Virus record (IMG/VR): IMGVR_UViG_3300035698_018317 | Coordinates: 1 to 64,000 of that record | Length of the DNA stretch: 64,000 nt | Strand: one strand, 5' to 3' | In this document: one piece after another, positions 1 through 16,685 of the stretch | Numbering within the stretch: the first letter of the stretch is position 1 | How the letters are laid out: every line of letters starts with the position of its first letter | Position numbers and translations under genes: made by a program | Notes under the pieces: generated by a model | Database searches by the model: none | What the model saw: the letters and a program-made list of their open reading frames with translations, nothing else | What the model was told of the DNA's origin: nothing

Positions 1-190
1 AACGAAATGCTTATCAGAGAATACAAAGGCGTCAAGTTCCCTTGCCCCGGTGTCTGCACAAATAAGTGGGATACCGAAGATTGGAAACAGTGGATTGAAA
101 ATCACAGAACCAATTAGTTATTAATTAACTTGTACATGATTGGTCAGTAAGTAAACGAACGAAACACTTTAGTAAAGGATTACCACCACC

Positions 191-664
191 ATGCCGAAGA
201 AACCCACCGAAACAACTGCACTCGAAGACATCCGAGCCAAAATCGAAGAAACCAAACAGGAAATGGCCGAAAGAGACCAAGTAATCGAGGCGGCGCAAGA
301 ACTGAACGAACTGAATAAGAAAGCCAATCAGCAAATCGACATGCTGAACCGACTCGCAATCTGCGCCGACGACACCGATGTTGACTGGTTGATGGTTTAC
401 AAAACGCAGTCCCACCGCTTCAACAAAGGCGGTACGCCGCTCGAAATTCTCCATCTGCTGATTGCGGGGAAAATCGAAACCAACGATAAAAACTGCCTGA
501 CCCCGGCAGATGTACGGGACCAGTTGATAGCACTGGGATACCACAAATACGCCGCTTTCAATAACAACCAAGGCTATGCGTTGGTCTACGGTGCCTTGCG
601 AAAAATCGGGGCAATGGCCGGAATGCAATGGATGAACGCCATCCGAGTCGGCATCTACATCTAA
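191..664 (+). CDS. Hypothetical protein (probable early gene)
   Basis: 157-aa ORF with AAAGGA SD upstream, followed by a 15-bp hairpin. Confidence 0.75.
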   Translation: MPKKPTETTALEDIRAKIEETKQEMAERDQVIEAAQELNELNKKANQQIDMLNRLAICADDTDVDWLMVYKTQSHRFNKGGTPLEILHLLIAGKIETNDKNCLTPADVRDQLIALGYHKYAAFNNNQGYALVYGALRKIGAMAGMQWMNAIRVGIYI

Positions 665-678
665 AACCCACTAACCAC

Positions 679-717
679 GATATCCCGTTAGGTGAAGCTC
701 ATACCTAACGGGATATC
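679..717 (+). terminator. 15-bp stem-loop after ORF 191-664
   Basis: GATATCCCGTTAGGT / ACCTAACGGGATATC, followed by TGTTT. Confidence 0.7.
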
Positions 718-935
718 TGTTTATATTCAACCCCCTGTACATGATAATCAATTGCTTATAATAAACTAATTCGTTAGCATGTACACAATGGAGCATGAAG
801 CAAAGTAACACAATACAACGAAACTGACGAAAAGAAAAGAAAAGTAATTAGTTAAGTTGTACATGATGAGATGTAAAGTAAAACAAACAATCGCCACACT
901 AACCAAAGACGCACAGAGAAGAGAAGGAAAAGCCC

Positions 936-1292
936 ATGATTACACCGGAATCAATCACGACCCTGACCGAAGCCGAAAAGCTCCAAGCAGATGCGCTCGA
1001 AGCACACTGCGACGGAATCATCGGACCCGCAAGCCAGTTGGACCCCGCCCAGAAAGATTACGTTGTCGATATGGGTGCTTACGCCAAGGCCGCCAAGAAA
1101 GCCGACAAGGACTTTGTCCTGTCCATCAAGGTCCGGGCGAACGTAGCCACACGCTACGAAGAGGCGAACTGGAAAGTCGCTTACGATGTCGCAACGTCCA
1201 AGCTGACTTTCACCATGCCCAAGGTGAAACGCACGTACAAGAAACGTGACCCCTCGCCCGCCGTAGTCGTACCGCCCGCCGAAGCTGCATAA
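936..1292 (+). CDS. Hypothetical protein ending -AEAA
   Basis: 118-aa ORF with AAGGAAA SD. Confidence 0.75.
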   Translation: MITPESITTLTEAEKLQADALEAHCDGIIGPASQLDPAQKDYVVDMGAYAKAAKKADKDFVLSIKVRANVATRYEEANWKVAYDVATSKLTFTMPKVKRTYKKRDPSPAVVVPPAEAA

Positions 1293-1338
1293 CTGCATAA
1301 CCGCATAACTCCGAAGCTGTAAAAATATTATCGGAACG

Positions 1339-1374
1339 GCCCCGCTGGAATTCCACCAGCGGGGCTTTGTTTTA
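1339..1374 (+). terminator. Intrinsic terminator
   Basis: GCCCCGCTGG / CCAGCGGGGC stem followed by TTTGTTTT. Confidence 0.75.
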
Positions 1375-1475
1375 TATTAAGTTATTAGTTAGCATGTACA
1401 TAAGAAGGTAGTTAAAAGGCAACGTGACGCAACACCCCCGACCGGATGGCCCTATATAACTGGGCACTGCGGGGG

Positions 1476-1519
1476 AAGCCCCGGCATCGTCCCCCGAAGG
1501 GATGCCGGGGCTTTGTTTT
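1476..1519 (+). terminator. Intrinsic terminator
   Basis: AAGCCCCGGCATC / GATGCCGGGGCTT stem followed by TGTTTT. Confidence 0.75.
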
Positions 1520-1577
1520 ATATTAAGTTATTAATTAGCATGTACATAAGTAAGTGTTCAGAATGAAAGGAACAACA

Positions 1578-2018
1578 ATGTCATTGAACGTGAATTTCGA
1601 CGAATGTAAACCAGCCTTTGAAAAATGCGACAAAGGCTACAAACCCGAAGGACCATTTGCCATGGTCAAACGTGACGAAAAGGGCAATATCACACATCGT
1701 CTTACCCATACATGTCGAGCCATCGTTGGAATGCTCATGGGCCTCGGCATGGGAAGAATCACAGGAAAGACGGTTAACGAGTTCACCGAAAGAAGCGAAC
1801 TCTGGCAGGATGTAATCGGACCATGTGGACCGGGATGGTGCGATGATGCAGAGGACGAAATCAAATACGTGCGAATAACCCCCGAAGATATCCGCAACCA
1901 TATCGGCTTGGCCTCCAACGTGTCCAAAGAGACAAATGCAGTCTTCTACAAGAAGCTGCGGGGCAACGTCAAGGACCGTCTGTGGAGACTGGCCCAGAAA
2001 GCCGCCCAAGCTGCATAA
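1578..2018 (+). CDS. Hypothetical protein ending -KAAQAA
   Basis: GAAAGGAACAACA-ATG at 1578 preferred over the ORF-track start at 1554. Confidence 0.75.
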   Translation: MSLNVNFDECKPAFEKCDKGYKPEGPFAMVKRDEKGNITHRLTHTCRAIVGMLMGLGMGRITGKTVNEFTERSELWQDVIGPCGPGWCDDAEDEIKYVRITPEDIRNHIGLASNVSKETNAVFYKKLRGNVKDRLWRLAQKAAQAA

Positions 2019-2064
2019 CGAAGGTCGATGAGGTGCGACCCGCCATGCAAACCAGCTCAACAAG

Positions 2065-2099
2065 AAGTCCCCGCCCCGGATGGGTGGGGACTTTCCTTT
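2065..2099 (+). terminator. Intrinsic terminator
   Basis: AAGTCCCCGCCC / GGGTGGGGACTT stem (one G-T pair) followed by TCCTTT. Confidence 0.7.
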
Positions 2100-2157
2100 A
2101 TATTAAGTTATTAGTTAGCATGTACATAAGTAAGTGTTCAGAACGAAAGGAAACGAC

Positions 2158-2343
2158 ATGGACGCAAATCAGGCAGCAGACAAACTGGCAAAAGCCGCTA
2201 GTAAAGACACCAAAGGCAAAGGCACCGACCATCTAGGCACCAGTATGAGAGACATGCTGAAGGCTGGTGTAAGCGACGAGGTGCTGCTGACAGGCATGAG
2301 TGTGGCATCAGGGTACTTATCCCCCGAGTCCGCCGTAGCCTAA
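2158..2343 (+). CDS. Small hypothetical protein
   Basis: GAAAGGAAACGAC-ATG; sits in a motif/hairpin cassette. Confidence 0.65.
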   Translation: MDANQAADKLAKAASKDTKGKGTDHLGTSMRDMLKAGVSDEVLLTGMSVASGYLSPESAVA

Positions 2344-2364
2344 CCCCCCGCCCCCTAACCCTTG

Positions 2365-2392
2365 GCCCCGCCCCCTCCGGGCGGGGTCTCTT
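2365..2392 (+). terminator. GC-rich hairpin/terminator
   Basis: GCCCCGCCC / GGGCGGGGT stem followed by CTCTT and the conserved motif. Confidence 0.55.
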
Positions 2393-2458
2393 ATATATTA
2401 AGGTATTAATTAGCATGTACAGGGATTACTTTACTAATTAGCATGTACAAGATAGTGC

Positions 2459-2659
2459 ATGAGCAAGTCGAAGACCCTCATCATTGCTGCTCTGCTGTTG
2501 GCCCTCCCTGCTGGTATCGTACTCGCAGGAACATGGCTGACAGTGCAACGGCACAAACGGAAAGGACTCACCGATGAACATCAAGCTCGAAGCAATGGAA
2601 CAGGCACGCAGACAGGAGCAGGAACGACTCACCACGAACTGCTCACCGTGTACTCCTGA
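2459..2659 (+). CDS. Small protein with N-terminal hydrophobic segment
   Basis: 66 aa, LIIAALLLALPAGIVLAG; directly downstream of two TGTACA motifs. Confidence 0.5.
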   Translation: MSKSKTLIIAALLLALPAGIVLAGTWLTVQRHKRKGLTDEHQARSNGTGTQTGAGTTHHELLTVYS

Positions 2660-2806
2660 CGAACACTGTGCCGAGTGCCCCGGTCAAGGGTAACACGACA
2701 ACATACCAGCATCCCCGACCCCGCAGCAATGCGGGGCGGGGTTGCTTAGTTACCTTGTACATGATGGGGTGTAAGATACACCACCATGAACGAAAGGAAA
2801 CACATC

Positions 2807-3100
2807 ATGGACGCATCGAGAGACGAGAGAGTGATAGCAATCAGAGCCGACAACCTCATCGGTACAGACTCATGCTCATTCATTGATGAATGCTTGAGTG
2901 ATGCTGACATCGTAGAGGAACTAGACAGGCGTAACATAGTGTCACCTGTCGATGCTATCAAGCACCTCATCGACGCACAGCATGGACAGTACGAGCGAGG
3001 GTTGGGTACACGAGCAGGCGACGATGATGACCCCATCCTCATTCAGTTCAACGACTGGGTAGTCAGACGTGACGCTCACCTACTCACACTACCCAGCTAA
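2807..3100 (+). CDS. Hypothetical protein
   Basis: GAAAGGAAACACATC-ATG at 2807; followed by a 14-bp hairpin. Confidence 0.65.
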   Translation: MDASRDERVIAIRADNLIGTDSCSFIDECLSDADIVEELDRRNIVSPVDAIKHLIDAQHGQYERGLGTRAGDDDDPILIQFNDWVVRRDAHLLTLPS

Positions 3101-6641: not shown

Positions 6642-6652
6642 ACTGTTATATA

Positions 6653-7100
6653 GGTTATTAACTTGGTATAATACTGTGGGCGAGATATTTTTTGGAGATG
6701 GGACTCTTATATGTTATGGAATTGAAAGAAAGTATGCGAGAGTGGATGGATGTGGACATGGCTCAACATGAGTTAGCTAAGTGTTTAGGTGTTTTTGGTC
6801 TTCATACGGAAATGCGGCATTATAAAAGTGTTTATTGGTGTAACAATGATTGGGGTAATGAGTTATATGAAATTTTATTAAAATTGGCATCATTAGGTTT
6901 GCTTGAGCATCGTGAAGAGCCGGATATTCAATTTAGGTGGAACCCTAGATGTTCGCCACCTGATGATGACGGGTTGATAAGTTAATAACTTGGTATAATA
7001 CTGGGGGCGAGAAATTTTTTGATGGTGGGAGCCGCTGGAAAGTTATTAACTTGATATACTACTGGGAGCGAGATATTTTTTTGCGATGGGAGCCGCTGGG
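6653..7100 (+). repeat. Three copies of a ~50-nt motif GTTA(T/A)TAACTTG(G/A)TATA(A/C)TACTG.GG.GCGAGA.ATTTTTT
   Basis: Copies start at about 6654, 6981 and 7042; the last two share GGGAGCCGCTGG. Confidence 0.75.
6716..6985 (+). CDS. Hypothetical protein
   Basis: ORF lying between motif copies 1 and 2. Confidence 0.55.
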   Translation: MELKESMREWMDVDMAQHELAKCLGVFGLHTEMRHYKSVYWCNNDWGNELYEILLKLASLGLLEHREEPDIQFRWNPRCSPPDDDGLIS

Positions 7101-7110
7101 TGCCCGGACA

Positions 7111-7162
7111 CGTCTTGGGTAACAATATACAACGTTAGTGTTGTATATTGTTACCCAAGACG
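7111..7162. repeat. Perfect 23-bp inverted repeat with 6-nt loop
   Basis: CGTCTTGGGTAACAATATACAAC-gttagt-GTTGTATATTGTTACCCAAGACG. Confidence 0.9.
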
Positions 7163-7167
7163 AGATG

Positions 7168-7425
7168 TTAATTCGTTGTGGATAGCACAACTGCGGGGAC
7201 GCCGCCATCTGGGATGTCTTCTTCATCCCAACCGTTCTTCCTGTCTGATTCGGTTATAGGCCACGGGTATGTGTCGCCGCTCCAGCTATTCTCTGCTACA
7301 TACTTAACACCTTGGTAAGCATTATACAGAGGCGAGTAACTATTACCTTCACCATCTTTAGACATCACAACAATACTATCTTGGTCAAGCTTTTGTAGTT
7401 CGGCTATCAATTCAGAAACTTTCAT
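7168..7425 (-). CDS. Hypothetical phage protein
   Basis: 85 aa, MKVSELIAELQKL-type start; ATGA overlap with the upstream gene. Confidence 0.7.
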   Translation of the reverse strand: MKVSELIAELQKLDQDSIVVMSKDGEGNSYSPLYNAYQGVKYVAENSWSGDTYPWPITESDRKNGWDEEDIPDGGVPAVVLSTTN

Positions 7426-7805
7426 TTTTTAAGCCCTAACATTCTTAGTATCGTTGGAAGGGCTTCGTGACGTTTAACTATTCTGTTATACCTTCTTTTT
7501 ACTAATCTCGCTTTTTTGGATGTTCTAGTAGTCCATACAGGAGTTTTACTTAATCTTTTAATATTATAAACGGACGATATAGAGATGGCCAATTGCTCTT
7601 CTTTTTTGATATGAGCCTCAAGGATTTTCCCAAGGGATTTCCAAGAATAATAACTGATACGGAAGTTTTCACGTTCTAAGAAACGATTCATTATTACAAG
7701 ACCATCGGAGATTTCTAAGTCTTTTCCCCAAACCATATACTTCTTACGTGAGCCATACTCTTTCTTAAGTGTTATCAGATATTTGTCGCTCTCATTTATT
7801 TGCAT
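7422..7805 (-). CDS. Hypothetical protein
   Basis: 127-aa ORF with AAGGAAA SD. Confidence 0.65.
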   Translation of the reverse strand: MQINESDKYLITLKKEYGSRKKYMVWGKDLEISDGLVIMNRFLERENFRISYYSWKSLGKILEAHIKKEEQLAISISSVYNIKRLSKTPVWTTRTSKKARLVKRRYNRIVKRHEALPTILRMLGLKK

Positions 7806-7868
7806 GTTGTTTTCCTTGGTAAGCGTCTAGTATACCAAAAAATTATGATTTTGTAAAACATCTTTTTA

Positions 7869-8078
7869 TTACGACACTTTGTTGATAGCATCTTTCCACG
7901 ACGCAAACCACAGAGCATCTTCAAACGCTTCTTCCCAACCATTACTGCGGCTCCCATCGGGAAAAAACATCTCGCTATAATACTTATTCCCTTGGACTAA
8001 GACGTACCTAGGATATTCTTCTGGACCTACACGTTTAATTATTTTTTGTTTAGCAAATTCTGGGTTGTATTCATTCAT
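7869..8078 (-). CDS. Hypothetical protein, paralog of 8071-8307
   Basis: Shared KRVGPE..PRYVL.QG.KYY and AF.DALWF segments. Confidence 0.65.
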   Translation of the reverse strand: MNEYNPEFAKQKIIKRVGPEEYPRYVLVQGNKYYSEMFFPDGSRSNGWEEAFEDALWFASWKDAINKVS

Positions 8079-8307
8079 TTTTGTTTTTCTTAAAGAAGTT
8101 TCGATTAAAGTATGATTCTCCACCAGCTAGCGTTTCAAACCACAATGCGTCTGGAAACGCTCCAAACTCACCATCGGCACAATAATACTTACCTCCTTGA
8201 GCCAAGACGTACCTTGGAAATTTTTCTGGACCTACACGTTTAATAGTGATATCAAAATTATCACGAATCCATTCTTTCCATAATTTCAAACTCTTATATT
8301 CTTTCAT
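8071..8307 (-). CDS. Hypothetical protein, paralog of 7869-8078
   Basis: GAAAGG SD; starts just past the end of CRISPR array 1. Confidence 0.65.
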   Translation of the reverse strand: MKEYKSLKLWKEWIRDNFDITIKRVGPEKFPRYVLAQGGKYYCADGEFGAFPDALWFETLAGGESYFNRNFFKKNKNE

Positions 8308-8333
8308 TTTATTACCTTTCAAAATATCCTAGT

Positions 8334-8973
8334 CAAACACCCCTACGCATGTAGGGAAAACCTCGGACGACGCTGTTTATGGCGGACCCTCCGTAGGGAC
8401 ACCCCTACGCATGTAGGGAAAACGACCTGCTTGAACGCTTGGAAATTTCTGGTACAGGGACACCCCTACGCATGTAGGGAAAACAAATAAAACAATCAGG
8501 AGACAAAGAGTTGGCTAAGGGACACCCCTACGCATGTAGGGAAAACGCTCTGTAAGCTGTCGTAAGGAAGACTCAGTGGGGACACCCCTACGCATGTAGG
8601 GAAAACTTAGAACTTTCTATGTTGCCGTTAGAACCCTCAATGGGGACACCCCTACGCATGTAGGGAACACGCTGCTGATTTGGCAACATTCAGAGCAGAT
8701 GAAGGGACACCCCTACGTTGTAGGGAAAAATTAAACAATCGTTTTTTCAACAGAAAACCCATTGGTACACCCCTACGCATATGTAGGGAAAACATAAAAA
8801 GAGGAGAAATAAAACGAGAACACTGGGTACACCCCTACGAATGTAGGGAACCTATCGTTGCGATACTCAGACGTGGTATTCCTTGGGGACACCCCTACGC
8901 ATGGTAGGGAAAATGGCCAAGTGGTTCACCGTGGCCAACCATGAACCGGGAACACCCTTACATGTAGGGATAC
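8334..8973 (-). CRISPR. CRISPR array 1: 11 repeats, 10 spacers, type I-E
   Basis: 28-nt repeat GTTTTCCCTACATGCGTAGGGGTGTCCC (minus sense). Plus-strand repeat starts at 8334, 8396, 8457, 8519, 8579, 8643, 8704, 8764, 8826, 8886 and 8948; spacers 32-36 nt. Confidence 0.97.
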
Positions 8974-8975
8974 AA

Positions 8976-9545
8976 TCATCGGCTTAACAGCAACATTCCA
9001 AATCCAAAAGATTTACCTTTGCCTATACCTTTTTTAATGGTTTGAGAGAAATCTTCTGTAGAAGTTATTTTTAACTTACCTTTGAAAACAACTTTGTTAT
9101 GTGTTTGTTTACCTATTTTGTCTTTGAATTGTATTGATGATGGTTGTCCTATATTAAGACCACATATAGTAAACCCATGCTGTTTACCTTTTCTCACAAT
9201 CCAACGCACTAAATCTTTTTCTTCAGTAATAGCTCTATATTTTTTATTTTGTTTAACAACAGGATTTGCTGTTAATACAAAATTAAATATTTTTCCGTCC
9301 TTTACACCGACATCAAATTGTTTAACATCTGCGTGGAACTTTTTATCTGACCAATTAGGTTTTGTTTCAGACTGTACCAAAACAGAGTCATCACAAACAA
9401 CATATAGGACATTATGGTTCTGTCTAGCCATTCCTTTTTCATCGGGGAATCCAGACATTACGGTTCTATGTATTTGATAATTTGATGCAATAAGTCTATA
9501 ACATTCTGGGGTTGGTTTAAATTTTAATTTTGATAAGAACATCAT
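8976..9545 (-). CDS. cas6e: Type I-E crRNA endonuclease Cas6e
   Basis: YQIHRTV, VLVQS, F.LTANP and C-terminal G-loop GIGKGKSFGFG. Confidence 0.93.
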   Translation of the reverse strand: MMFLSKLKFKPTPECYRLIASNYQIHRTVMSGFPDEKGMARQNHNVLYVVCDDSVLVQSETKPNWSDKKFHADVKQFDVGVKDGKIFNFVLTANPVVKQNKKYRAITEEKDLVRWIVRKGKQHGFTICGLNIGQPSSIQFKDKIGKQTHNKVVFKGKLKITSTEDFSQTIKKGIGKGKSFGFGMLLLSR

Positions 9546-10162
9546 TCTCCTTTACCAAAGTCAACATGAACAGATTGGATGTTTCTAGCCCCATATACTT
9601 TATCTGATATAGGAACATCCTCAACTCGTTCGCTGTCTATTGTTTTTTCATTAGTTTCTACAATAAATCTAACAACATTTTTTGCAGGTAGTTGTTTAAG
9701 AGCATCAAATGGGTTTTCATCATTTGTGACTTTAGAGATAATTGGTGTCGTAATAGGACATGCCAACCTTCCCATATAAAGATGATAACATGGATGGTTT
9801 AAGCCTTCAGTTATTTCATCCACGAGTATGTCATCGCCTGTCAATGCGACAGTGAATTGACTATCGGAAGAGAGGTAATATCTCCATGTTTGAACACTTT
9901 GTTTCCCTTTTCCAATCAATTTAACGAAATTACCAGCATTTTGGTAGTCGCATTCTTTTACACCTTGATTATCAACTCGCACCGCCATTCGAAGGCTAAG
10001 AAGTTCCTTAGCCTTCGAATGGTTAGAACGGATTCCCATAGCGGATTTAATTAAGCCTAGTATTCCGCTATAAGTTGGTTCATTGCGAGTTTCTCGATAA
10101 ACATGCTTGCTGCTATCGCCCCAACTCTGCATACCTTTAAGTGTTAATATAATGGTTTTCAT
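9542..10162 (-). CDS. cas5e: Type I-E Cas5
   Basis: MQSWG, EPTYSGILGLI and LYMGRLACP; start moved to 10162 (AAGGGA SD). Confidence 0.93.
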   Translation of the reverse strand: MKTIILTLKGMQSWGDSSKHVYRETRNEPTYSGILGLIKSAMGIRSNHSKAKELLSLRMAVRVDNQGVKECDYQNAGNFVKLIGKGKQSVQTWRYYLSSDSQFTVALTGDDILVDEITEGLNHPCYHLYMGRLACPITTPIISKVTNDENPFDALKQLPAKNVVRFIVETNEKTIDSERVEDVPISDKVYGARNIQSVHVDFGKGE

Positions 10163-10166
10163 TTTT

Positions 10167-11267
10167 TTATCCCTTAAGAGTATCCACAACTTTTTCGCAT
10201 ACTTCTTGTAAGGACATCTTGCCGTCAATATCCTTTAAGGAGCATACAAACGTGTGAGAAGGTTTATTTCCAAAAGTTTCTTCTACTGCTTGTCGATATT
10301 CGAAGAAGTTACGGATAGCCACATCAGTAAGGCTTTCTTTATCTTTATGATTGGGAACTACTGGAGTCTCAAAAGCGTTCACATCGCTATTTGGTTGAGT
10401 ATCCAAAATGTCCACAACCACAAGGGCAGGCACAACATTATTGGCAAATGTATTAGCTTTTCCTTTTGGTACGTCCATAGCGAATGCTGAAATGAATTCA
10501 GCACATGCCTCTGCTGTAAGATTGGCGTCATCAAGATTTTCCATAAGTTTATCAACGCAAATTGAAGCATATTGATAATAGCAGGAAGAATTAAACGACA
10601 ATGAGCCAAGGTGACCAGCCCCAGTGGTATCCTCTTCCCCAGAGTCAATCTTAAGGTCATCTATTGCTGTAAAATAATCAAATTCTTCAGCAAGGGCATT
10701 CACACCCATTGCATGGGCGACCTGTACAGCGGCATAAACTTCATGGGTTTTGACGGTAGCTTGCATTCTTCCGAACATGGCAACATCGACAGTGATGCCA
10801 ATAGGTTTCCCATGAAGTATTTTCTTGATATTCTTGATATCAAAATCGTCTTCCTTCATTGCCACAACAACTCTGTCAATAATGCTATCAATTTCTTTAT
10901 CAGACGTAAAAATCAAACAGGATGTAAGGTTTTCTTTTCCTTTTTTACTATTTCTCTTCTTGTCGAAAACTGTGTTAACGATAGCATTGGCAATATTAAC
11001 ACGAGTTTTTTCATCTTCTACAAAATCCAACTTGTTGATGATTCGTTTAAGAATCATCTGTGTTCGAATTCCGTGATAAGCATGAACTTTTTCAGCGTCC
11101 ATGTTCTCATGCCAGAATTCACGAACCATTCTCTTAAGACATTGGCTAGAAATTCTGGAGCGGCGGGAGCCACCAAATACACAATCTTTTTGTTCTCCAC
11201 TATCATCCGCATTAGGTCTAGACACGGGGTAGTTCTTCAATAATCCAATCTTTACAAATTTTGACAT
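10167..11267 (-). CDS. cas7e: Type I-E backbone subunit Cas7
   Basis: NADDSGEQKDCVFGG.RRSRISSQCLKR, DVAMFGRM, VQVAHA and DYFTAIDD. Confidence 0.95.
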   Translation of the reverse strand: MSKFVKIGLLKNYPVSRPNADDSGEQKDCVFGGSRRSRISSQCLKRMVREFWHENMDAEKVHAYHGIRTQMILKRIINKLDFVEDEKTRVNIANAIVNTVFDKKRNSKKGKENLTSCLIFTSDKEIDSIIDRVVVAMKEDDFDIKNIKKILHGKPIGITVDVAMFGRMQATVKTHEVYAAVQVAHAMGVNALAEEFDYFTAIDDLKIDSGEEDTTGAGHLGSLSFNSSCYYQYASICVDKLMENLDDANLTAEACAEFISAFAMDVPKGKANTFANNVVPALVVVDILDTQPNSDVNAFETPVVPNHKDKESLTDVAIRNFFEYRQAVEETFGNKPSHTFVCSLKDIDGKMSLQEVCEKVVDTLKG

Positions 11268-11284
11268 TTTTTTAATTCCTTCTG

Positions 11285-11815
11285 TTATGCCATTTCTGGC
11301 GAGTTAATTTTTTCTTTTTTTGATTCTACTTTTTTTACTGGTTGTTCCCAAAAATCTTTTGAGAATTTGTTTTGAACCCACATATCATCTTCTTTCCACC
11401 ATGTTAATCCTTGTAACAAATCAGCCCAATTAATCGGAATTCTTTTAGCTGCTGATAATCGTATCAGTGTTCCAAGATGTTGGAATACTGGGATTTCTTC
11501 TGTAGCATCTAGGAAAGAAAGAAATTTCCTATTCATTCCTTCTTCGCTATATTCCTTAATTAATGGTTTAATACTTTTACCAAATGATTTTGTGTCTGTA
11601 TGACGTGGGTTGATTGCGAATAAGCGTGCTGTATGAATGAAACAGAGATTACTCCAAGATTCATTTTGTGTTGGAAGGTATGGGTAAATATACCTACCAA
11701 TTTGAAACAGCTTAGTTGGGTTACTTTTCTTAAATTTTGACAATATAGCTGGGCCTCTTTTGCTTTTTGTCAATTTAACTAAATGGTCTATAAAATTGTC
11801 TATTCTTTTATTCAT
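11285..11815 (-). CDS. cse2: Type I-E small subunit Cas11 (Cse2)
   Basis: Lies between cas8e and cas7; helical, with INWADLL and KDFW motifs. Confidence 0.88.
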   Translation of the reverse strand: MNKRIDNFIDHLVKLTKSKRGPAILSKFKKSNPTKLFQIGRYIYPYLPTQNESWSNLCFIHTARLFAINPRHTDTKSFGKSIKPLIKEYSEEGMNRKFLSFLDATEEIPVFQHLGTLIRLSAAKRIPINWADLLQGLTWWKEDDMWVQNKFSKDFWEQPVKKVESKKEKINSPEMA

Positions 11816-13232
11816 TTTTCTTTCCTTTATTAAACAGGATGATTTCGAAACTTTTTAAATTTCCTTTTTGGTACAAGTATTCTAACACATTTTTTCGGCT
11901 CCCACTCATTAACTTTCTTGTTTCGTTCATGAATAATTTGTGGGCCACTTCTCTTATTTTTTTCACAAAAGATATTTTTGCTTCTACTGTCTTTTGAGAC
12001 ATGAATTCTAGAAATAAGGTGTTAGCTTCGCTCCAGAATAAAACTTTAACTTGTTCTGGACTTTCTAAAGTAAATTGTTTATAGAGACGATAAACAAAAC
12101 TTCTCAGGTGAACTCCTACACGATTAGCTTCTTCAACAACTTGACATATAATTTCCTGAATATCATCATTTTTGATACAGTCGGTTGAAAGAGGTAGTAC
12201 ATCTTCTGAAATCATTTTATATTTGGTTAATTTATCATCCATATAAAATCCATATGATTGATATCCAAAATCAATCATATCATCGAAGATGTCTAAGTTT
12301 TCATTGTTTGCAAAAACATACTCACCGTCTGCAACTCCAGCCTTGACAGAAATCACAAAGGATTTGAAATTATTCCATAAATGTTCAGCATGGGAAAAAC
12401 GGAGAGGTTTATACCCATCTTTGGTGTTTTTGTATACTACGAATGGGTCACGTAATCCTTCAATCGGTTCATTACCCTTATCCCAATACATATAGGAAAA
12501 AGTTCCATTGTCATTAGGAAGTAATTTGATGCTTCTGGAGCAACGAGTCAAATATTGCATATATCCACGGACTTTGTTATCATTTAATACCGGGGACTCA
12601 TCCTCCCAAACGGGACTATCTTCTTCTGTCTGCGGAATGTTAAGATTTTCATCTAAAGGATGGGCATTAAGCATAAATGTTTGGAATAAATTCTTTCCAG
12701 TAAGAAGAACGGGCATTCCACGTTGGCTAGACGCATGAAAAGTAGAACGATGTTCGCCAAGTCCTTTGCCAGTATTTAAGGCAAAAGATTGAAGTGTCAT
12801 CAATTGAATAGCTACATCTTCAGCTTGAACAGACGTAGTTTTGATAAAATTTCTTGATGACCATGATGCATCGGCATCTGTTAAAAAATTAAGTCTATTA
12901 ACAGATTCCTTTTTCTTTGTTTGAAGTTTGGGGTCTTGTAGGAAAGGCTTTTTGGTGTCTAGTAAATCAAAGCAAAAAGAGTTCAAATAATTGGTGGTTG
13001 ATTTATCAAAACAACCTTTTTCCCAAAGTGCTTTCCACTCTTCCTCATTGTTCAATCCGTAAGCTCTATAAAGAACGGGCAGGAACATCCTAGTGAAGGC
13101 CAAATTTTGAAGAGGCTGAGAAAATGCCGTAGATTCAATTTCGTGAGCATGTTCAAAGACGGAGATAAGGTTATGGCTTCCTTGTAACGTTGAAATCCAA
13201 TTTTCAGTTTTTAAGTCGTATGATGTCGTCAT
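11808..13232 (-). CDS. cas8e: Type I-E large subunit Cas8e (Cse1)
   Basis: YDL..ENWI, PLQNLAF.R, EEEW..LWEKG and FDL....PFLQ; GAAAGGAA SD gives a start at 13232. Confidence 0.9.
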   Translation of the reverse strand: MTTSYDLKTENWISTLQGSHNLISVFEHAHEIESTAFSQPLQNLAFTRMFLPVLYRAYGLNNEEEWKALWEKGCFDKSTTNYLNSFCFDLLDTKKPFLQDPKLQTKKKESVNRLNFLTDADASWSSRNFIKTTSVQAEDVAIQLMTLQSFALNTGKGLGEHRSTFHASSQRGMPVLLTGKNLFQTFMLNAHPLDENLNIPQTEEDSPVWEDESPVLNDNKVRGYMQYLTRCSRSIKLLPNDNGTFSYMYWDKGNEPIEGLRDPFVVYKNTKDGYKPLRFSHAEHLWNNFKSFVISVKAGVADGEYVFANNENLDIFDDMIDFGYQSYGFYMDDKLTKYKMISEDVLPLSTDCIKNDDIQEIICQVVEEANRVGVHLRSFVYRLYKQFTLESPEQVKVLFWSEANTLFLEFMSQKTVEAKISFVKKIREVAHKLFMNETRKLMSGSRKNVLEYLYQKGNLKSFEIILFNKGKKNE

Positions 13233-13265
13233 GTTATTTCCTTTCTTAATTATCATCATGTCAAG

Positions 13266-13294
13266 AATATACAGTATGATAAAATAAAAAGCAA
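13266..13294 (-). promoter_or_regulatory. Sigma70-like promoter for the cascade operon
   Basis: Minus strand TTGCTT-17 nt-TATATT between array 2 and cas8e. Confidence 0.5.
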
Positions 13295-13341
13295 GAGAAA
13301 TCCCATATTGTTTTTATTTGAAAAACATATTTTTTAGAAAC

Positions 13342-13740
13342 TTAACACCCCTACGAATGTAGGGAAAACAAAAAAAAGAAGAAGGAATTTCTCCCACGAT
13401 AAGGGACACCCCTACGTTTGTAGGGAAAACTTCTCTAAAAATTTACGAGCATCAGCAACTAGCGGGACACCCCTACGCATGTAGGGAAAACCAGCCGCAG
13501 AGAGATTCCAGAGCGTTCAGTTAGGGGCACCCCTACGCATGTAGGGAAAACGCTAGGTCAGTTCTTCGGGGCCACGTCGCACGAAAGGAACACCCCTACG
13601 TATGTAGGGAAAACCTTTCTGAGTTGCAGATTCGGTCGTGACAACGTTAGGGACACCCCTACGCATGTAGGGAAAACAAGCAATAGATAAAGCATTGAGC
13701 GAAGCTCAATGAGGGACACCCCTACGCATGTAGGGAAAAC
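13342..13740 (-). CRISPR. CRISPR array 2: 7 repeats, 6 spacers, between cas3 and cas8e
   Basis: Same repeat as array 1. Plus-strand starts at 13342, 13403, 13464, 13524, 13587, 13650 and 13713; spacers 32-35 nt. Confidence 0.97.
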
Positions 13741-13773
13741 TATAACATTTAGTAGTAGAGTAATATGTTGTGT

Positions 13774-16368
13774 TTAGTATTTTTTTAGTCTTTTGAGTTG
13801 TAGTCCATTTTCTAAATCATATTTGGCTTCGAAATTTGCTCGTTTTAAATAATTATTTTCATCTAGAATCAAAAGTCCGCAATATCTAAGTGGTGTGCGT
13901 TCCCACTCTTCTCGTATTGTTTTTTGGAAATAATTAAAGTAAGGGTTTCCAATAATTGGACATTGACTTTTTTGTAATAGTTCTATTTCTTTTTTATTTG
14001 GTATTTTTGTTAAATCGGGTGCAAGTATTTTCCTTTTTGGGTCTAAGTACCACCTTTTATCCCCTTGTTTATAGAATAAAATGACCACTTTCATTGCTGA
14101 AACAATATTTCTAGTGGATAGTTTATTCTCTTTTTCTTGTTTCTTAGAAGGATTTATGTTTAAATCATTATCTTCTTTTAAAACTATACTATTTGCTAAG
14201 TTTTCTTCTTTAACTTCTTTTTTTTCTAATTTGTCATGAGCTTTATTATAAGTTTCTTGTTCTTTTTTTGTAAGTTTTTCAAATGGTTTATACACATATT
14301 CAATTAATTCTTCAACCATATCTGGGATTTTTAATTGGGTCTTATTATGCAGTATATCATAAGTTCTTTGCATAGTATAAGAATCATAGACATAATTTTC
14401 TAGCACACCATCTTCATCGAATTCATAAACGACCCCTATTCTTGGAGAACGAAGCCCTAATGGTCGATTTATGATAAAGCGATGATTCCTGCCGCCTCGT
14501 TGTAACAATAAGTCAATTGGGCATAGAAATGTTAACATATAATCGAAATCTACATTAAGACTTTGTTCTATTATCTGAGTTCCTACTAAAATGGATATGA
14601 AAGGTCTTTTAGTACCATCTTTTCCATAATCACTAAGAACTTCTTGTGTTAATTTATCTTTATCTTCATCTCTAAATCGTGCATGAATTAATTTACGATG
14701 AATATCTGGGACCATTTTAGCTAGTAATTTATTTATTCTTTGTGCTTGTTTCACTGTGTTACAGACAATAGCTAGACATCCTCCATTTTTTATTTTTTTC
14801 AGAACATGTCCCAATAATTCATAATATTGTTGAACTACAATACCATTTTTTATTTTAAAATTAGGGTTTATATAAAAATGGTCTAATTTAATTGTTTTAG
14901 TTTTTTCAGGAGGTAATTTTTTAACAATTGTTTTATTTCCAGAAACTACACATACCCTAGGGTATGGAACGTCTTCTTTTAATTCGCCACCATAAGCTTC
15001 AACAAATTCTTTTTTCATTTGTTTTGTTAAGGTGGCAGATAGCATAATGACTGAACATCTTAGATTTTTAAGTTCTTTTAACAATCTTTTAATTAAGACT
15101 TGCATATAAGTGTCATAAGCGTGTATTTCATCAAAAATTACTACTTTATTTACTAGTCCATATAAACGGAGGAAGAAGTATTTTACAGGGACGACACCAA
15201 ACAGAGCTTGGTCTATTGTGCTATCACCAAACTGTGAGAAAAACTTACGCTTTCCACTATTGAACCATTCAAATGGGGAGACAGTATCTTTTGTGTCTAT
15301 TTTTTTATACCATTCATGAGCATTAGCATTGCCATGTCCTATTTGGAAATTTGCCTCTCCATCTGTTATATTTTCTAAATAGTTAACTGTTCTATCTACC
15401 ATGGCATTTGTAGTTGCTTGAGTTGGCATAAGAATATGCATCCCACGATGTCCAACATTTGTCATTAACTTATCTGAGGCATAGAAGCCCACTTCTGTCT
15501 TTCCCTGCCCCGTACTCATTTCGACAATCAAAAGAGATGGTTCTTTTAACTTATCTGCAATTTCTATAATTGTTTTTTGTGATTCATATGGAGTTATATT
15601 CGGGAACATTTCCTCAAAGCTTAAATCTTTAATAGGACATAAATCCATTTTGATATTATCTAATGCAAATTTAGCCTTTTGAGGAAGGTCTTTTACATAT
15701 TCTTGCCATGTTGTTTCTTCCCCTGCAAAGGGGAAGAAATTTTCATCGGAAGCAATCCAATCGGAGAGAGAAAGTAATCCTGAAAAGAAGAAATAAAAGT
15801 GTTGAGGCAACTTTGCTTTCTTCCATATTTTTGACGGAATTGGGAACACCTTTTGAATCACATCTATTGCTAATTCTTGTTGTTCTTTCCACTTATCATC
15901 TTTTAAACATTTAAAGAAAAATCTTCCATCTTGTTTTCTAGGTTTTGGGAGAACTGAGTATCGCCCATGATGACCACCAAGAAGGGAACAAAGTGTATCA
16001 GGCAATTTTCCATTCATTATTTGTTTAGAAAATACTTCATGTCGGAAATGTGGTTTGTTCTTTCCATCTAGACCAAAAAAGTTATACCCATCATCTTGTA
16101 ACGGCTTATAAGCTTCAGATTGAATAGCAAAATTTGGTGTTATTTTACCAATATCATGATATGGAACTATTCCAACTACAAATTGTATTGCTTCATCTTT
16201 AGTTAATCCCAATGAATTAGCCATATATTCTAATTCTTCATCAGGCAGTATCCTAAGAAGAATTTCTTTAGCAATAAAACCCGAATCTAACATATGAAAT
16301 AAAGCAGGATGTGTTTTCTTTGTTGCTCTGTCAAATTTACCCCAAATTTTATAATCTATTTTATTCAT
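13774..16368 (-). CDS. cas3: Cas3 HD nuclease-helicase
   Basis: HDIGK, HHG, SDWIASD, STGQGKTE, DEIH, SATL and QRGGR.HR; start at 16368 overlaps the upstream stop (TGATG). Confidence 0.95.
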   Translation of the reverse strand: MNKIDYKIWGKFDRATKKTHPALFHMLDSGFIAKEILLRILPDEELEYMANSLGLTKDEAIQFVVGIVPYHDIGKITPNFAIQSEAYKPLQDDGYNFFGLDGKNKPHFRHEVFSKQIMNGKLPDTLCSLLGGHHGRYSVLPKPRKQDGRFFFKCLKDDKWKEQQELAIDVIQKVFPIPSKIWKKAKLPQHFYFFFSGLLSLSDWIASDENFFPFAGEETTWQEYVKDLPQKAKFALDNIKMDLCPIKDLSFEEMFPNITPYESQKTIIEIADKLKEPSLLIVEMSTGQGKTEVGFYASDKLMTNVGHRGMHILMPTQATTNAMVDRTVNYLENITDGEANFQIGHGNANAHEWYKKIDTKDTVSPFEWFNSGKRKFFSQFGDSTIDQALFGVVPVKYFFLRLYGLVNKVVIFDEIHAYDTYMQVLIKRLLKELKNLRCSVIMLSATLTKQMKKEFVEAYGGELKEDVPYPRVCVVSGNKTIVKKLPPEKTKTIKLDHFYINPNFKIKNGIVVQQYYELLGHVLKKIKNGGCLAIVCNTVKQAQRINKLLAKMVPDIHRKLIHARFRDEDKDKLTQEVLSDYGKDGTKRPFISILVGTQIIEQSLNVDFDYMLTFLCPIDLLLQRGGRNHRFIINRPLGLRSPRIGVVYEFDEDGVLENYVYDSYTMQRTYDILHNKTQLKIPDMVEELIEYVYKPFEKLTKKEQETYNKAHDKLEKKEVKEENLANSIVLKEDNDLNINPSKKQEKENKLSTRNIVSAMKVVILFYKQGDKRWYLDPKRKILAPDLTKIPNKKEIELLQKSQCPIIGNPYFNYFQKTIREEWERTPLRYCGLLILDENNYLKRANFEAKYDLENGLQLKRLKKY

Positions 16369-16685
16369 CACCCACCAATGCCCATGTTGTTCTTGTAAGG
16401 CCATATGATACGGCCAGATTGTAAGATATCCCACACCATTTTTTTCCATACTTTTCTTATATGGATATGAAATTCTTCAGATGTTACTAATTTTTTTTCA
16501 ATAAGTTGGAATCCCAATTCAGAATCATCAACACCCATTCTATTAAGAGCTTCCCACAAATATCCTACTATTTTATCAACTGTTCTATATTTCTTTCTAA
16601 TATCTTTATCATGCATTGCGACTTCTGCATGTTCGAATATTAGTTCGGCTGCTTCGCACACACGTTCTGATAATTCTGTACACAT
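16368..16685 (-). CDS. Small helical protein whose stop overlaps the cas3 start; paralog of 16691-16981
   Basis: Starts MCTELSERVCEAAELIFEH. Confidence 0.75.
   Translation of the reverse strand: MCTELSERVCEAAELIFEHAEVAMHDKDIRKKYRTVDKIVGYLWEALNRMGVDDSELGFQLIEKKLVTSEEFHIHIRKVWKKMVWDILQSGRIIWPYKNNMGIGG

What the first reader, a model, noticed from the sequence alone, without database searches (positions are those of the whole stretch)
8362..8395. A spacer that encodes the catalytic motif of an amino-DNA methyltransferase
Seen: from its third base the spacer reads CGG ACG ACG CTG TTT ATG GCG GAC CCT CCG TA = R-T-T-L-F-M-A-D-P-P-(TA.), using GC-rich codons unlike this phage's main body. Known: DPPY is motif IV of N6-A/N4-C methyltransferases, in Dam-like enzymes often in a TLFYLDPPY context. 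If the crRNA-sense PAM is AAT, the next coding base is T and gives TAT = Tyr, completing DPPY. Inference: the phage CRISPR targets an MTase gene of the host (restriction-modification or epigenetic control) or of a rival element.
Basis: partly seen in the sequence, partly recalled or inferred. Interest (0 to 1): 0.75.

Follow-up and report, generated by a model that had tools for sequence, protein, structure and literature searches.

The report
Phage CRISPR spacer resembling methyltransferase motif
The last spacer of a CRISPR array carried by a large phage from an Antarctic salt lake reads, in one frame, like the catalytic DPPY region of a Dam-type DNA methyltransferase, so the phage's own type I-E CRISPR-Cas system was probably once aimed at such a gene on a foreign element, but no matching target DNA could be found in any collection searched.

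Summary
Window 8362-8395 is a 34-nt spacer, 62% GC in a 37% GC phage, and its + strand frame 3 reads RTTLFMADPP followed by TA.

It is the last spacer, next to the terminal repeat, of an 11-repeat array. The array lies behind a complete phage-borne type I-E interference module: cas3, cse1, cse2, cas7, cas5 and cas6e, with a second 7-repeat array. No cas1 or cas2 was found in the 225-kb record. The crRNA is most likely read from the - strand.

The methyltransferase reading is statistically well supported:
- 141 D12-class (Dam-like) enzymes show the context T-L-F-Y-x-DPPY.
- A matrix built from them scores the spacer at 24 bits, inside the family's own range.
- None of 300,000 composition-matched random 34-mers reached that score, and the other 15 spacers scored below -13 bits.
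- The peptide TTLFMADPPY occurs in a D12 methylase on an integrase-bearing element of a Victivallales genome.

No protospacer was found in GenBank phages, PLSDB, IMG/VR, GTDB genomes, JGI metagenomes or four salt-lake and marine runs, three of which hold the phage. The target gene, its owner (host or rival element) and the PAM therefore remain inferred.

This is a new member of a known kind (huge-phage CRISPR-Cas without adaptation genes) and of modest interest.

The parts
8362..8395 (-). Spacer A1_S10 (34 nt, 62% GC), the last spacer of array 1. Its reverse complement (the + strand, frame 3) reads RTTLFMADPP+TA.
8396..8423 (-). Repeat R10, a perfect 28-nt consensus repeat. It supplies the 5' handle of the S10 crRNA.
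   Evidence: 7-bp stem with tetraloop, -9.7 kcal/mol
8334..8361 (-). Terminal repeat R11. Its first 25 nt, including the hairpin, match the consensus; the last 3 nt have diverged. It supplies the 3' hairpin of the S10 crRNA.
8334..8974 (-). CRISPR array 1, with 11 repeats and 10 spacers of 32-36 nt. Repeats R1-R5, next to cas6e, carry indels or substitutions; R7-R10 are perfect.
8976..9545 (-). cas6e (Cse3/CasE), 189 aa
   Evidence: PF08798 3.6e-36, TIGR01907 3.5e-25
9542..10228 (-). cas5e (CasD), 228 aa
   Evidence: PF09704 3.9e-31, TIGR01868 3.9e-29
10167..11267 (-). cas7e (Cse4/CasC), 366 aa
   Evidence: PF09344 2.7e-88, TIGR01869 3.2e-72
11285..11815 (-). cse2 (CasB/Cas11e), 176 aa
   Evidence: PF09485 9.2e-15
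11808..13259 (-). cse1 (CasA/Cas8e), 483 aa
   Evidence: PF09481 1.2e-51, TIGR02547 1.4e-24
13342..13740 (-). CRISPR array 2, with 7 repeats and 6 spacers, between cas3 and cse1. The terminal repeat has diverged at its 3' end.
13774..16449 (-). cas3 (HD nuclease plus helicase), 891 aa
   Evidence: PF18019 1.1e-31, PF22590 1.1e-28, TIGR01587 1.6e-63

Best explanation
The phage carries its own type I-E interference machinery (Cascade genes plus Cas3) and two short arrays, but no adaptation genes in the part recovered.

Proposed mechanism:
1. The arrays are transcribed from the - strand together with, or just behind, the cas genes.
2. Cas6e cuts at the base of each repeat hairpin.
3. The unit R10-S10-R11 yields a mature crRNA whose guide is the reverse complement of window 8362-8395.
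4. This guide was captured from the motif IV (DPPY) region of a D12-class, Dam-like N6-adenine DNA methyltransferase gene. That gene lay on a GC-rich foreign replicon, most likely a competing mobile element (prophage, integrative or conjugative element) rather than the host core genome.
5. On meeting that DNA beside a PAM, Cascade would form an R-loop and recruit Cas3 to degrade it.

Shown: the array, the cas genes, the intact flanking repeats, and the statistical fit of the peptide to D12 motif IV.
Inferred: the strand of transcription, the methyltransferase origin, the mobile-element owner, and present-day activity.
For: - All six type I-E interference genes are full-length and above curated cut-offs.
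- Both terminal repeats diverge at their 3' ends when read on the - strand, which is the strand of the cas genes.
- The repeat folds as 4 nt, a 7-bp stem with tetraloop, then 6 nt, as expected of a Cas6e substrate.
- The repeats flanking S10 keep the hairpin.
- The peptide RTTLFMADPP scores 24.0 bits on a D12 motif IV matrix built from 141 independent sequences. The family's own range is 19.0-36.9, and 17% of members score lower. No random 34-mer out of 300,000 reached it.
- In the phage's own 225 kb, six frames, the only other window of at least 10 bits is its genuine D12 methylase.
- TTLFMADPPY occurs in a 354-aa HTH-D12 methylase (PF02086). That gene lies beside an integrase, a transposase and further methylases. 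Its 52% relative lies beside a recombinase, a ParB-methylase, DUF5131 and an AcrVA2-like gene.
- Published huge phages carry CRISPR systems without Cas1/2/4 whose spacers hit other phages (PMC7162821).
Against: - No protospacer, exact or with synonymous changes, was found in GenBank phages, PLSDB, IMG/VR, GTDB species genomes or JGI metagenomes, including contigs of the Ace Lake sample that carries the phage (L007).
- None was found in 401 genomes of the phylum that holds the nearest peptide match.
- None was listed in four sequencing runs, three of which hold the identical phage and one a relative (listing truncated).
- The evidence is 10 codons, and the family matrix was chosen after seeing the peptide.
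- M at position -2 is rare in the family.
- FMADPP+TA also occurs out of frame or in non-coding DNA.
- A hydrophobic-DPPF string occurs in the phage's own tail sheath protein.
- The spacer is 62% GC while the phage is 37% GC, which is odd for anything that shares its host.
- It is the oldest spacer, there are no adaptation genes, and the repeats nearest cas6e are decayed, so the system may no longer be in use.
Confidence: 0.55

Rival explanations
1. Chance resemblance. The spacer comes from some other gene, another frame or non-coding DNA, and the DPP string with its context is a coincidence picked out by reading 16 spacers in six frames.
For: - Five of six frames are open.
- DPP with a Tyr/Phe-compatible end arises in about 1 of 900 random 34-mers of this composition.
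- FMADPP+TA occurs 18 times in IMG/VR, and 16 of these are in short or stopped frames.
- TLFMADPP also occurs in a non-coding palindrome in sediment contigs.
- A real non-methylase protein of this phage has LAIVDPPF.
- Many conserved motifs exist, so some 24-bit match to some family is not rare if one looks everywhere.
Against: - The hypothesis was fixed on DPPY before the context was tested. The upstream T-L-F adds about 10.7 bits.
- None of 300,000 random sequences reached the score, and the other spacers score below -13 bits.
- The TA that follows fits Tyr.
- The only long-ORF carrier of TLFMADPP in GTDB plus JGI is a D12 methylase.
Confidence: 0.2
2. The spacer is a fossil. It does derive from a methyltransferase gene, but it was inherited with the array (for example when the cas locus was captured from a bacterium) and has no current target or use.
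For: - It is in the leader-distal, oldest position.
- No cas1 or cas2 is present in 225 kb.
- There is no leader between the cas6e stop codon and the first repeat, and repeats R1-R5 are decayed.
- No target was found in the assembled contigs of the Ace Lake sample or in the runs laid.
- The GC content is foreign to the phage.
Against: - The repeats around S6-S10 and nearly all of array 2 are intact, and all interference genes are full-length.
- The record is only about 44% of the genome, so adaptation genes may lie elsewhere, or the host's could be used in trans (PMC7162821).
- The cas genes are fully ameliorated to the phage's GC, which argues for long retention under selection.
- The phage is identical across three runs, spacer included.
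Confidence: 0.15
3. The target is a methyltransferase gene of the host chromosome (a restriction-modification or orphan Dam gene). The phage removes or represses it while supplying its own methylases.
For: - The phage encodes its own D12 methylase (record 107061-107759) and an N6_N4 methylase (record 136544-137428).
- Huge phages with spacers against host genes that they themselves replace, such as sigma-70, are published (PMC7162821).
Against: - The spacer is 62% GC with GC-rich third positions, against a 37% GC phage, and phage GC usually tracks host GC.
- Cas3-equipped type I-E would shred the host chromosome rather than tune one gene.
- The nearest bearers of the peptide are in mobile elements.
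- There was no match in 185,579 species genomes.
Confidence: 0.1

Closest known systems
CRISPR-Cas systems of huge phages without adaptation genes (Al-Shayeb et al. 2020, PMC7162821)
   Same: It is a large phage with compact arrays (7 and 11 repeats) and an interference module. No Cas1/Cas2 was found. Its spacers are presumed to hit competing elements or host genes.
   Different: This one is a complete canonical type I-E set with Cas3 and Cas6e. The systems highlighted in that paper are the I-C variant, type V and Cas-phi. No target of any of its 16 spacers is known.
Ace Lake 528-kb huge phage, cluster 24 (Panwar et al. 2020, PMC7416419)
   Same: It comes from the same lake and the same anoxic zone. 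A 4.3-kb contig identical to the window comes from Ace Lake, 24 m, 0.1 um fraction. Both carry CRISPR-Cas without cas1/2/4, and in both the spacers have no IMG/VR match.
   Different: That phage is 56% GC and was typed I-C. This one is 36.8% GC and type I-E, so it is a different phage.
Type I-E Cascade-Cas3 of E. coli and S. thermophilus CRISPR4 (from memory)
   Same: The gene set and order from cse1 to cas6e are the same, with cas3 upstream. The repeat is 28 nt with a 7-bp stem and tetraloop near its centre. Spacers are about 33 nt.
   Different: - No cas1-cas2 and no leader.
- An extra array between cas3 and cse1.
- Spacer lengths of 32-36 nt.
- Carried by a phage.
- No Rfam CRISPR-DR family matches the repeat.
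Vibrio phage ICP1 type I-F CRISPR-Cas against PLE (Seed et al. 2013, from memory)
   Same: A phage-borne type I system with Cas3-type nuclease, used against another genetic element in the same cell.
   Different: ICP1 has Cas1 and acquires spacers, and its target is known and experimentally shown. Here neither holds.
D12-class N6-adenine DNA methyltransferases (Pfam PF02086, Dam-like), as the presumed source of the spacer
   Same: The motif IV context T-L-F-x-x-D-P-P-(Y) matches. A 10-residue identity exists with one member that is fused to an HTH domain.
   Different: Only 10 codons are available. M-A replaces the usual Y-[LVC] before DPPY. No gene with this DNA sequence is known.

Membership tests
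CRISPR array | Three or more near-identical direct repeats of 23-50 nt, separated by unique spacers of similar length | tested here: met
   Array 1 has 11 repeats and array 2 has 7 repeats of 28 nt. There are 16 unique spacers of 32-36 nt, and none recurs elsewhere in the 225-kb record.
Type I-E CRISPR-Cas | Cascade genes cse1 (cas8e), cse2 (cas11e), cas7e, cas5e and cas6e | tested here: met
   All five are above the Pfam and NCBIfam curated cut-offs and lie in canonical order on the - strand.
Type I-E CRISPR-Cas | Cas3 with an HD nuclease and an SF2 helicase | tested here: met
   PF18019, PF00270 and PF22590 match, and TIGR01587 scores 215 bits. The catalytic residues were not inspected one by one.
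Type I-E CRISPR-Cas | Adaptation module cas1-cas2 | tested here: not met
   PF01867 and PF09707 have no match in the 225-kb record. The record is about 44% of the genome, so absence from the whole phage is not proven.
Type I-E CRISPR-Cas | Repeat with a stable internal hairpin followed by a 7-8 nt handle (a Cas6e substrate) | tested here: met
   Read on the - strand, the repeat is 4 nt, a 7-bp stem with tetraloop, then 6 nt, at -9.7 kcal/mol. There is no Rfam match. Processing itself was not tested.
Type I-E CRISPR-Cas | PAM-dependent DNA interference | not testable with these tools
   No protospacer is known for any spacer, so no PAM can be derived.
Target = amino-DNA methyltransferase (D12 class, PF02086) | Motif IV (D/N/S)PP(Y/F) preceded by a hydrophobic strand | tested here: inconclusive
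   DPP is present and the Tyr codon is only begun (TA). The context T-L-F fits 141 family members, at 24.0 bits and p below about 3e-6 per spacer under a random model. This rests on 10 codons only.
Target = amino-DNA methyltransferase (D12 class, PF02086) | The protospacer lies in a gene that has the whole methylase domain (motif I FxGxG and so on) | tested here: not met
   No protospacer was found in any collection. The only gene with the peptide is 25/34 identical at DNA level, too far to be the target.

The most novel reading that the evidence does not exclude
The phage uses its CRISPR-Cas to eliminate or silence a Dam-type methyltransferase of its host or of a resident element, while bringing its own D12 and N6_N4 methylases. 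This would be an epigenetic takeover, analogous to the published sigma-70 case in huge phages. It would also be the first case of a virus aiming CRISPR at DNA-modification machinery.
Probability: 0.07. Interest if true: 0.6.

Novelty: new member of a known kind. Interest (0 to 1): 0.3.

Why it matters
Phage-borne CRISPR-Cas systems are thought to serve in conflicts between mobile elements, but few of their spacers have identified targets. A spacer that can be assigned to a gene family from its coding content alone gives a hint of what such a phage fights. Here that is an element carrying an orphan Dam-like methylase, a typical anti-restriction gene. The case also shows a way to read otherwise unmatched ('dark') spacers, by scoring their six-frame translations against family motif matrices. 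The case itself adds a complete type I-E module to the catalogue of huge-phage CRISPR systems. It does not change what is known about how they work.

Tried and rejected
Searches for the protospacer, none of which found a credible target:
1. BLAST of the spacer against GenBank phages gave no hit. Against PLSDB it gave only 18-25 nt partial matches in unrelated genes, E 0.9 or higher.
2. Exact 31-mer: none in IMG/VR or GTDB genomes.
3. Wobble-degenerate patterns: none in IMG/VR. One GTDB hit and four JGI hits were found. These were the phage's own array (L007), two copies of one Victivallales D12 gene (25/34 identical) and two non-coding palindromes.
4. The PAM-proximal 20-mer with wobble positions free, and the exact PAM-distal 20-mer, in IMG/VR: best 23/34, and none.
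5. Pattern with up to 3 mismatches in 401 genomes of the phylum of the Victivallales genome: none.
6. Contigs of four salt-lake or marine runs laid on 8300-13800: no listed piece confined to the spacer, but the listing was truncated.
7. Word-based protein search around the L005 motif in 5.8 billion proteins: only that gene and a fragment of it.

Other searches that led nowhere:
- Self-targeting: no spacer matches elsewhere in the 225-kb record.
- The arrays BLASTed whole against phages gave one 25/27 match of spacer A1_S8 to a human-gut phage contig at E 0.7, taken as chance.
- Two array-2 spacers have no match in IMG/VR.
- The repeat has no match in IMG/VR.
- There are no close Cas7 relatives in IMG/VR.

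Ideas rejected:
- That this is the published 528-kb Ace Lake huge phage. The GC contents are 0.56 and 0.37.
- That a generic 'hydrophobic + DPP[YF]' rule is diagnostic. The phage's tail sheath protein has it.
- Host assignment from the Atlas neighbours of Cas7, Cse1 and Cas3. The taxa were mixed: Bacillota, Verrucomicrobiota, Actinomycetota and Pseudomonadota.

Full report
**What is at the coordinates.**
Window 8334-8974 holds eleven copies of a 28-nt repeat, spaced 60-64 nt start to start. A second set of seven copies lies at 13342-13740. The stretch 8362-8395 is the 34-nt unique sequence between a perfect repeat (8396-8423) and the outermost repeat (8334-8361). The spacer is 62% GC. The whole 225,284-bp virus record is 36.8% GC and the cas genes are 31-39% GC.

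**Surroundings.**
Between and beside the arrays, all on the - strand, lie these genes:
- cas3, 13774-16449
- cse1, 11808-13259
- cse2, 11285-11815
- cas7, 10167-11267
- cas5, 9542-10228
- cas6e, 8976-9545

Each is above the curated Pfam and NCBIfam type I-E cut-offs. Cas1 (PF01867) and the I-E Cas2 (PF09707) have no match in the record. The record is estimated at 44% of the genome, so their absence from the whole phage is not proven.

The element is a phage. The window also encodes a baseplate wedge protein, a Dda-like helicase and a tRNA nucleotidyltransferase, and the record encodes a tail sheath protein. A 4,293-bp JGI contig is 100% identical to window 6704-10996. Its prefix belongs to Ace Lake, Antarctica, 24 m (anoxic zone), 0.1 um fraction, November 2013 (supplement of PMC7416419). 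Many salt-lake runs hold the phage. It is not the 528-kb Ace Lake huge phage described in that paper, which is 56% GC and was typed I-C.

**Orientation.**
Three things point to transcription from the - strand:
- The cas genes are on the - strand.
- Read on the - strand, both outermost repeats (8334-8361 and 13342-13369) keep their first 25 or so bases and diverge only at the 3' end, as terminal repeats usually do.
- Read that way, the repeat is 4 nt, a 7-bp stem with tetraloop, then 6 nt. This is the layout of Cas6e substrates as I recall them for E. coli and S. thermophilus CRISPR4. I could not confirm the latter sequence in the paper library.

No Rfam repeat family matches, so this remains an inference. 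On this reading S10 is the oldest spacer, not the newest. The unit R10-S10-R11 has both hairpins intact, so it can be processed.

Array 1 starts one base after the cas6e stop codon, without a leader. Its first five repeats carry indels or substitutions, while R7-R10 are perfect. This is the reverse of the usual decay gradient.

**Is the peptide more than chance?**
DPP with a Tyr/Phe-compatible continuation appears in 1.1e-3 of random 34-mers of this composition. With an open frame and three of four hydrophobic residues ahead, the rate is 8.5e-5.

Such a generic rule is not diagnostic. The phage's own six-frame translation has two DPP[YF] strings, one in its D12 methylase and one (LAIVDPPF) in the tail sheath protein. 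FMADPP+TA occurs 18 times in IMG/VR, and only two of these lie in long open frames.

The stronger test uses the family context. A degenerate search for T-L-F-M-A-D-P-P found one coding carrier in the GTDB species genomes and in the JGI metagenomes. It is a 354-aa protein of a Victivallales genome with an N-terminal HTH and a D12 methylase domain (PF02086), reading SPTTLFMADPPYFPG. An exhaustive HMMER search with that protein gave 10,004 relatives.

Of the best 150 listed, 141 had a usable DPP[YF] window once the query gene and its fragment were set aside, and these are independent of the spacer. They show T at -5 in 114, L at -4 in 91, F at -3 in 100 and Y at -2 in 102. A log-odds matrix from these 141 gave the following results:
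- The spacer's frame scores 24.0 bits. Family members score 19.0-36.9, and 17% score lower than the spacer.
- None of 300,000 random 34-mers reaches this score (maximum 18.2).
- The other 15 spacers score -13 to -32 bits.
- In the phage's 225 kb, the only other window of at least 10 bits is its real D12 methylase (19.5 bits).

Caveats:
- The matrix was chosen after the peptide was seen.
- With thousands of families, some 24-bit match somewhere is expected.

I weighed this against a rough prior for a spacer falling on motif IV of such a gene in mobile DNA, about 1e-5 by my own estimate. From this I put the methyltransferase origin at roughly 0.75-0.8.

**The target itself.**
The target was not found. 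The searches are listed under Tried and rejected. The Victivallales gene is only 25/34 identical, and its differences fall where the pattern allowed them, so it is a relative of the presumed source at best.

The four runs laid on 8300-13800 show the identical phage three times and a relative of roughly 90-95% identity once. No listed piece was confined to the spacer. However, 37 pieces and 14 loose ends were not shown, and one depth bin in run X1 has unexplained extra depth.

Panwar et al. likewise found no IMG/VR match for the spacers of the other Ace Lake huge phage.

**Host or rival element?**
The Victivallales methylase lies among two N6_N4 methylases, DUF3102 genes, a phage-type integrase and an rve transposase. 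Its 52% relative lies beside a serine recombinase, a ParB-methylase, DUF5131 and an AcrVA2-like gene. Both are integrative mobile elements.

The spacer's GC (62%, with 8 of 10 third positions G or C) is far from the phage's. Three of the 16 spacers are 60-62% GC, and the rest are 27-53%. A GC-foreign, broad-host-range element is therefore more plausible than the host core genome, but this is inference.

The phage has its own D12 and N6_N4 methylases. Their motif IV DNA is unrelated to the spacer.

**PAM.**
Nothing can be derived. The base after the repeat is T in 9 of 16 spacers, which is too weak for a PAM-derived position.

What the sequence does fix is this. On the crRNA-sense strand, the base just 5' of the protospacer must be a purine for the codon after DPP to be Tyr (TAY). 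A pyrimidine gives TAA or TAG. The I-E PAMs I recall (AAG in E. coli, AA in S. thermophilus) end in a purine, so the reading is compatible with them. In the Victivallales homologue the equivalent triplet would be AAA.

**Verdict.**
The methyltransferase origin is likely but rests on ten codons, and the owner of the gene, the PAM and present activity are open.
- The system is a further example of the known class of huge-phage CRISPR-Cas loci without adaptation genes (PMC7162821).

Noticed in passing
window 8704-8974: The five repeats of array 1 nearest cas6e (R1-R5) carry indels or substitutions in the loop or stem, while the distal ones are perfect. The array starts one base after the cas6e stop codon, with no leader. 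This is the reverse of the usual decay gradient and suggests a deletion that removed cas1-cas2 and the leader.
   Followed up: partly
window 13342-13740: A second array of 7 repeats sits between cas3 and cse1, only 33 nt after the cas3 stop codon. This is an unusual place for a type I-E array.
   Followed up: partly
window 7869-8322 (- strand): Two paralogous small ORFs (84 and 83 aa, with DNA repeats D3 and D5 72-86% alike) lie directly downstream of array 1. They have no Pfam match and their function is unknown.
   Followed up: partly
window 6652-7099: Three copies of a roughly 60-nt unit contain TTGGTATAATACTG-like boxes (77-100% alike, two of them in tandem). They are possibly repeated promoters.
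   Followed up: no
window 1-3000: An island of 45-53% GC lies in a 37% GC phage. The motif TGTACATGAT occurs four times on the + strand (131, 736, 858, 2756) where 0.24 are expected. The ORFs there have no Pfam match. It may be a foreign insert or a separately regulated module.
   Followed up: partly
window 8300-13800, run X18: A marine-metagenome run holds a relative of the cas locus, with many substitutions and small indels (most pieces under 95% alike). Related phages therefore exist outside the salt-lake samples.
   Followed up: no
window 8789-8822 (spacer A1_S3), run X1: A short contig matches only these 34 A-rich bases, with unrelated A-rich flanks. This is probably a low-complexity coincidence and not a protospacer.
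   Followed up: no
window 8489-8515 (spacer A1_S8): There is a 25/27 match to a human-gut phage contig (MT836591.1) at E 0.7, taken as chance.
   Followed up: no
L006 (about 283, 1946 and 3799) and L008 (about 83): Sediment-metagenome contigs carry a repeated perfect palindrome, TTTATGGCGGATCCGCCATAAA, three times on one 4.7-kb contig. It translates as LFMADPP on both strands by accident.
   Followed up: no
G000:C1:145276 (L032 124-2508): The phage tail sheath protein (794 aa, PF17482) contains LAIVDPPFG. This is a real non-methylase example of a hydrophobic strand followed by DPPF.
   Followed up: yes
window 8334-8974 and 13342-13740: Spacer lengths vary from 32 to 36 nt, which is wider than the fixed 32-33 nt usual for type I-E.
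   Followed up: no
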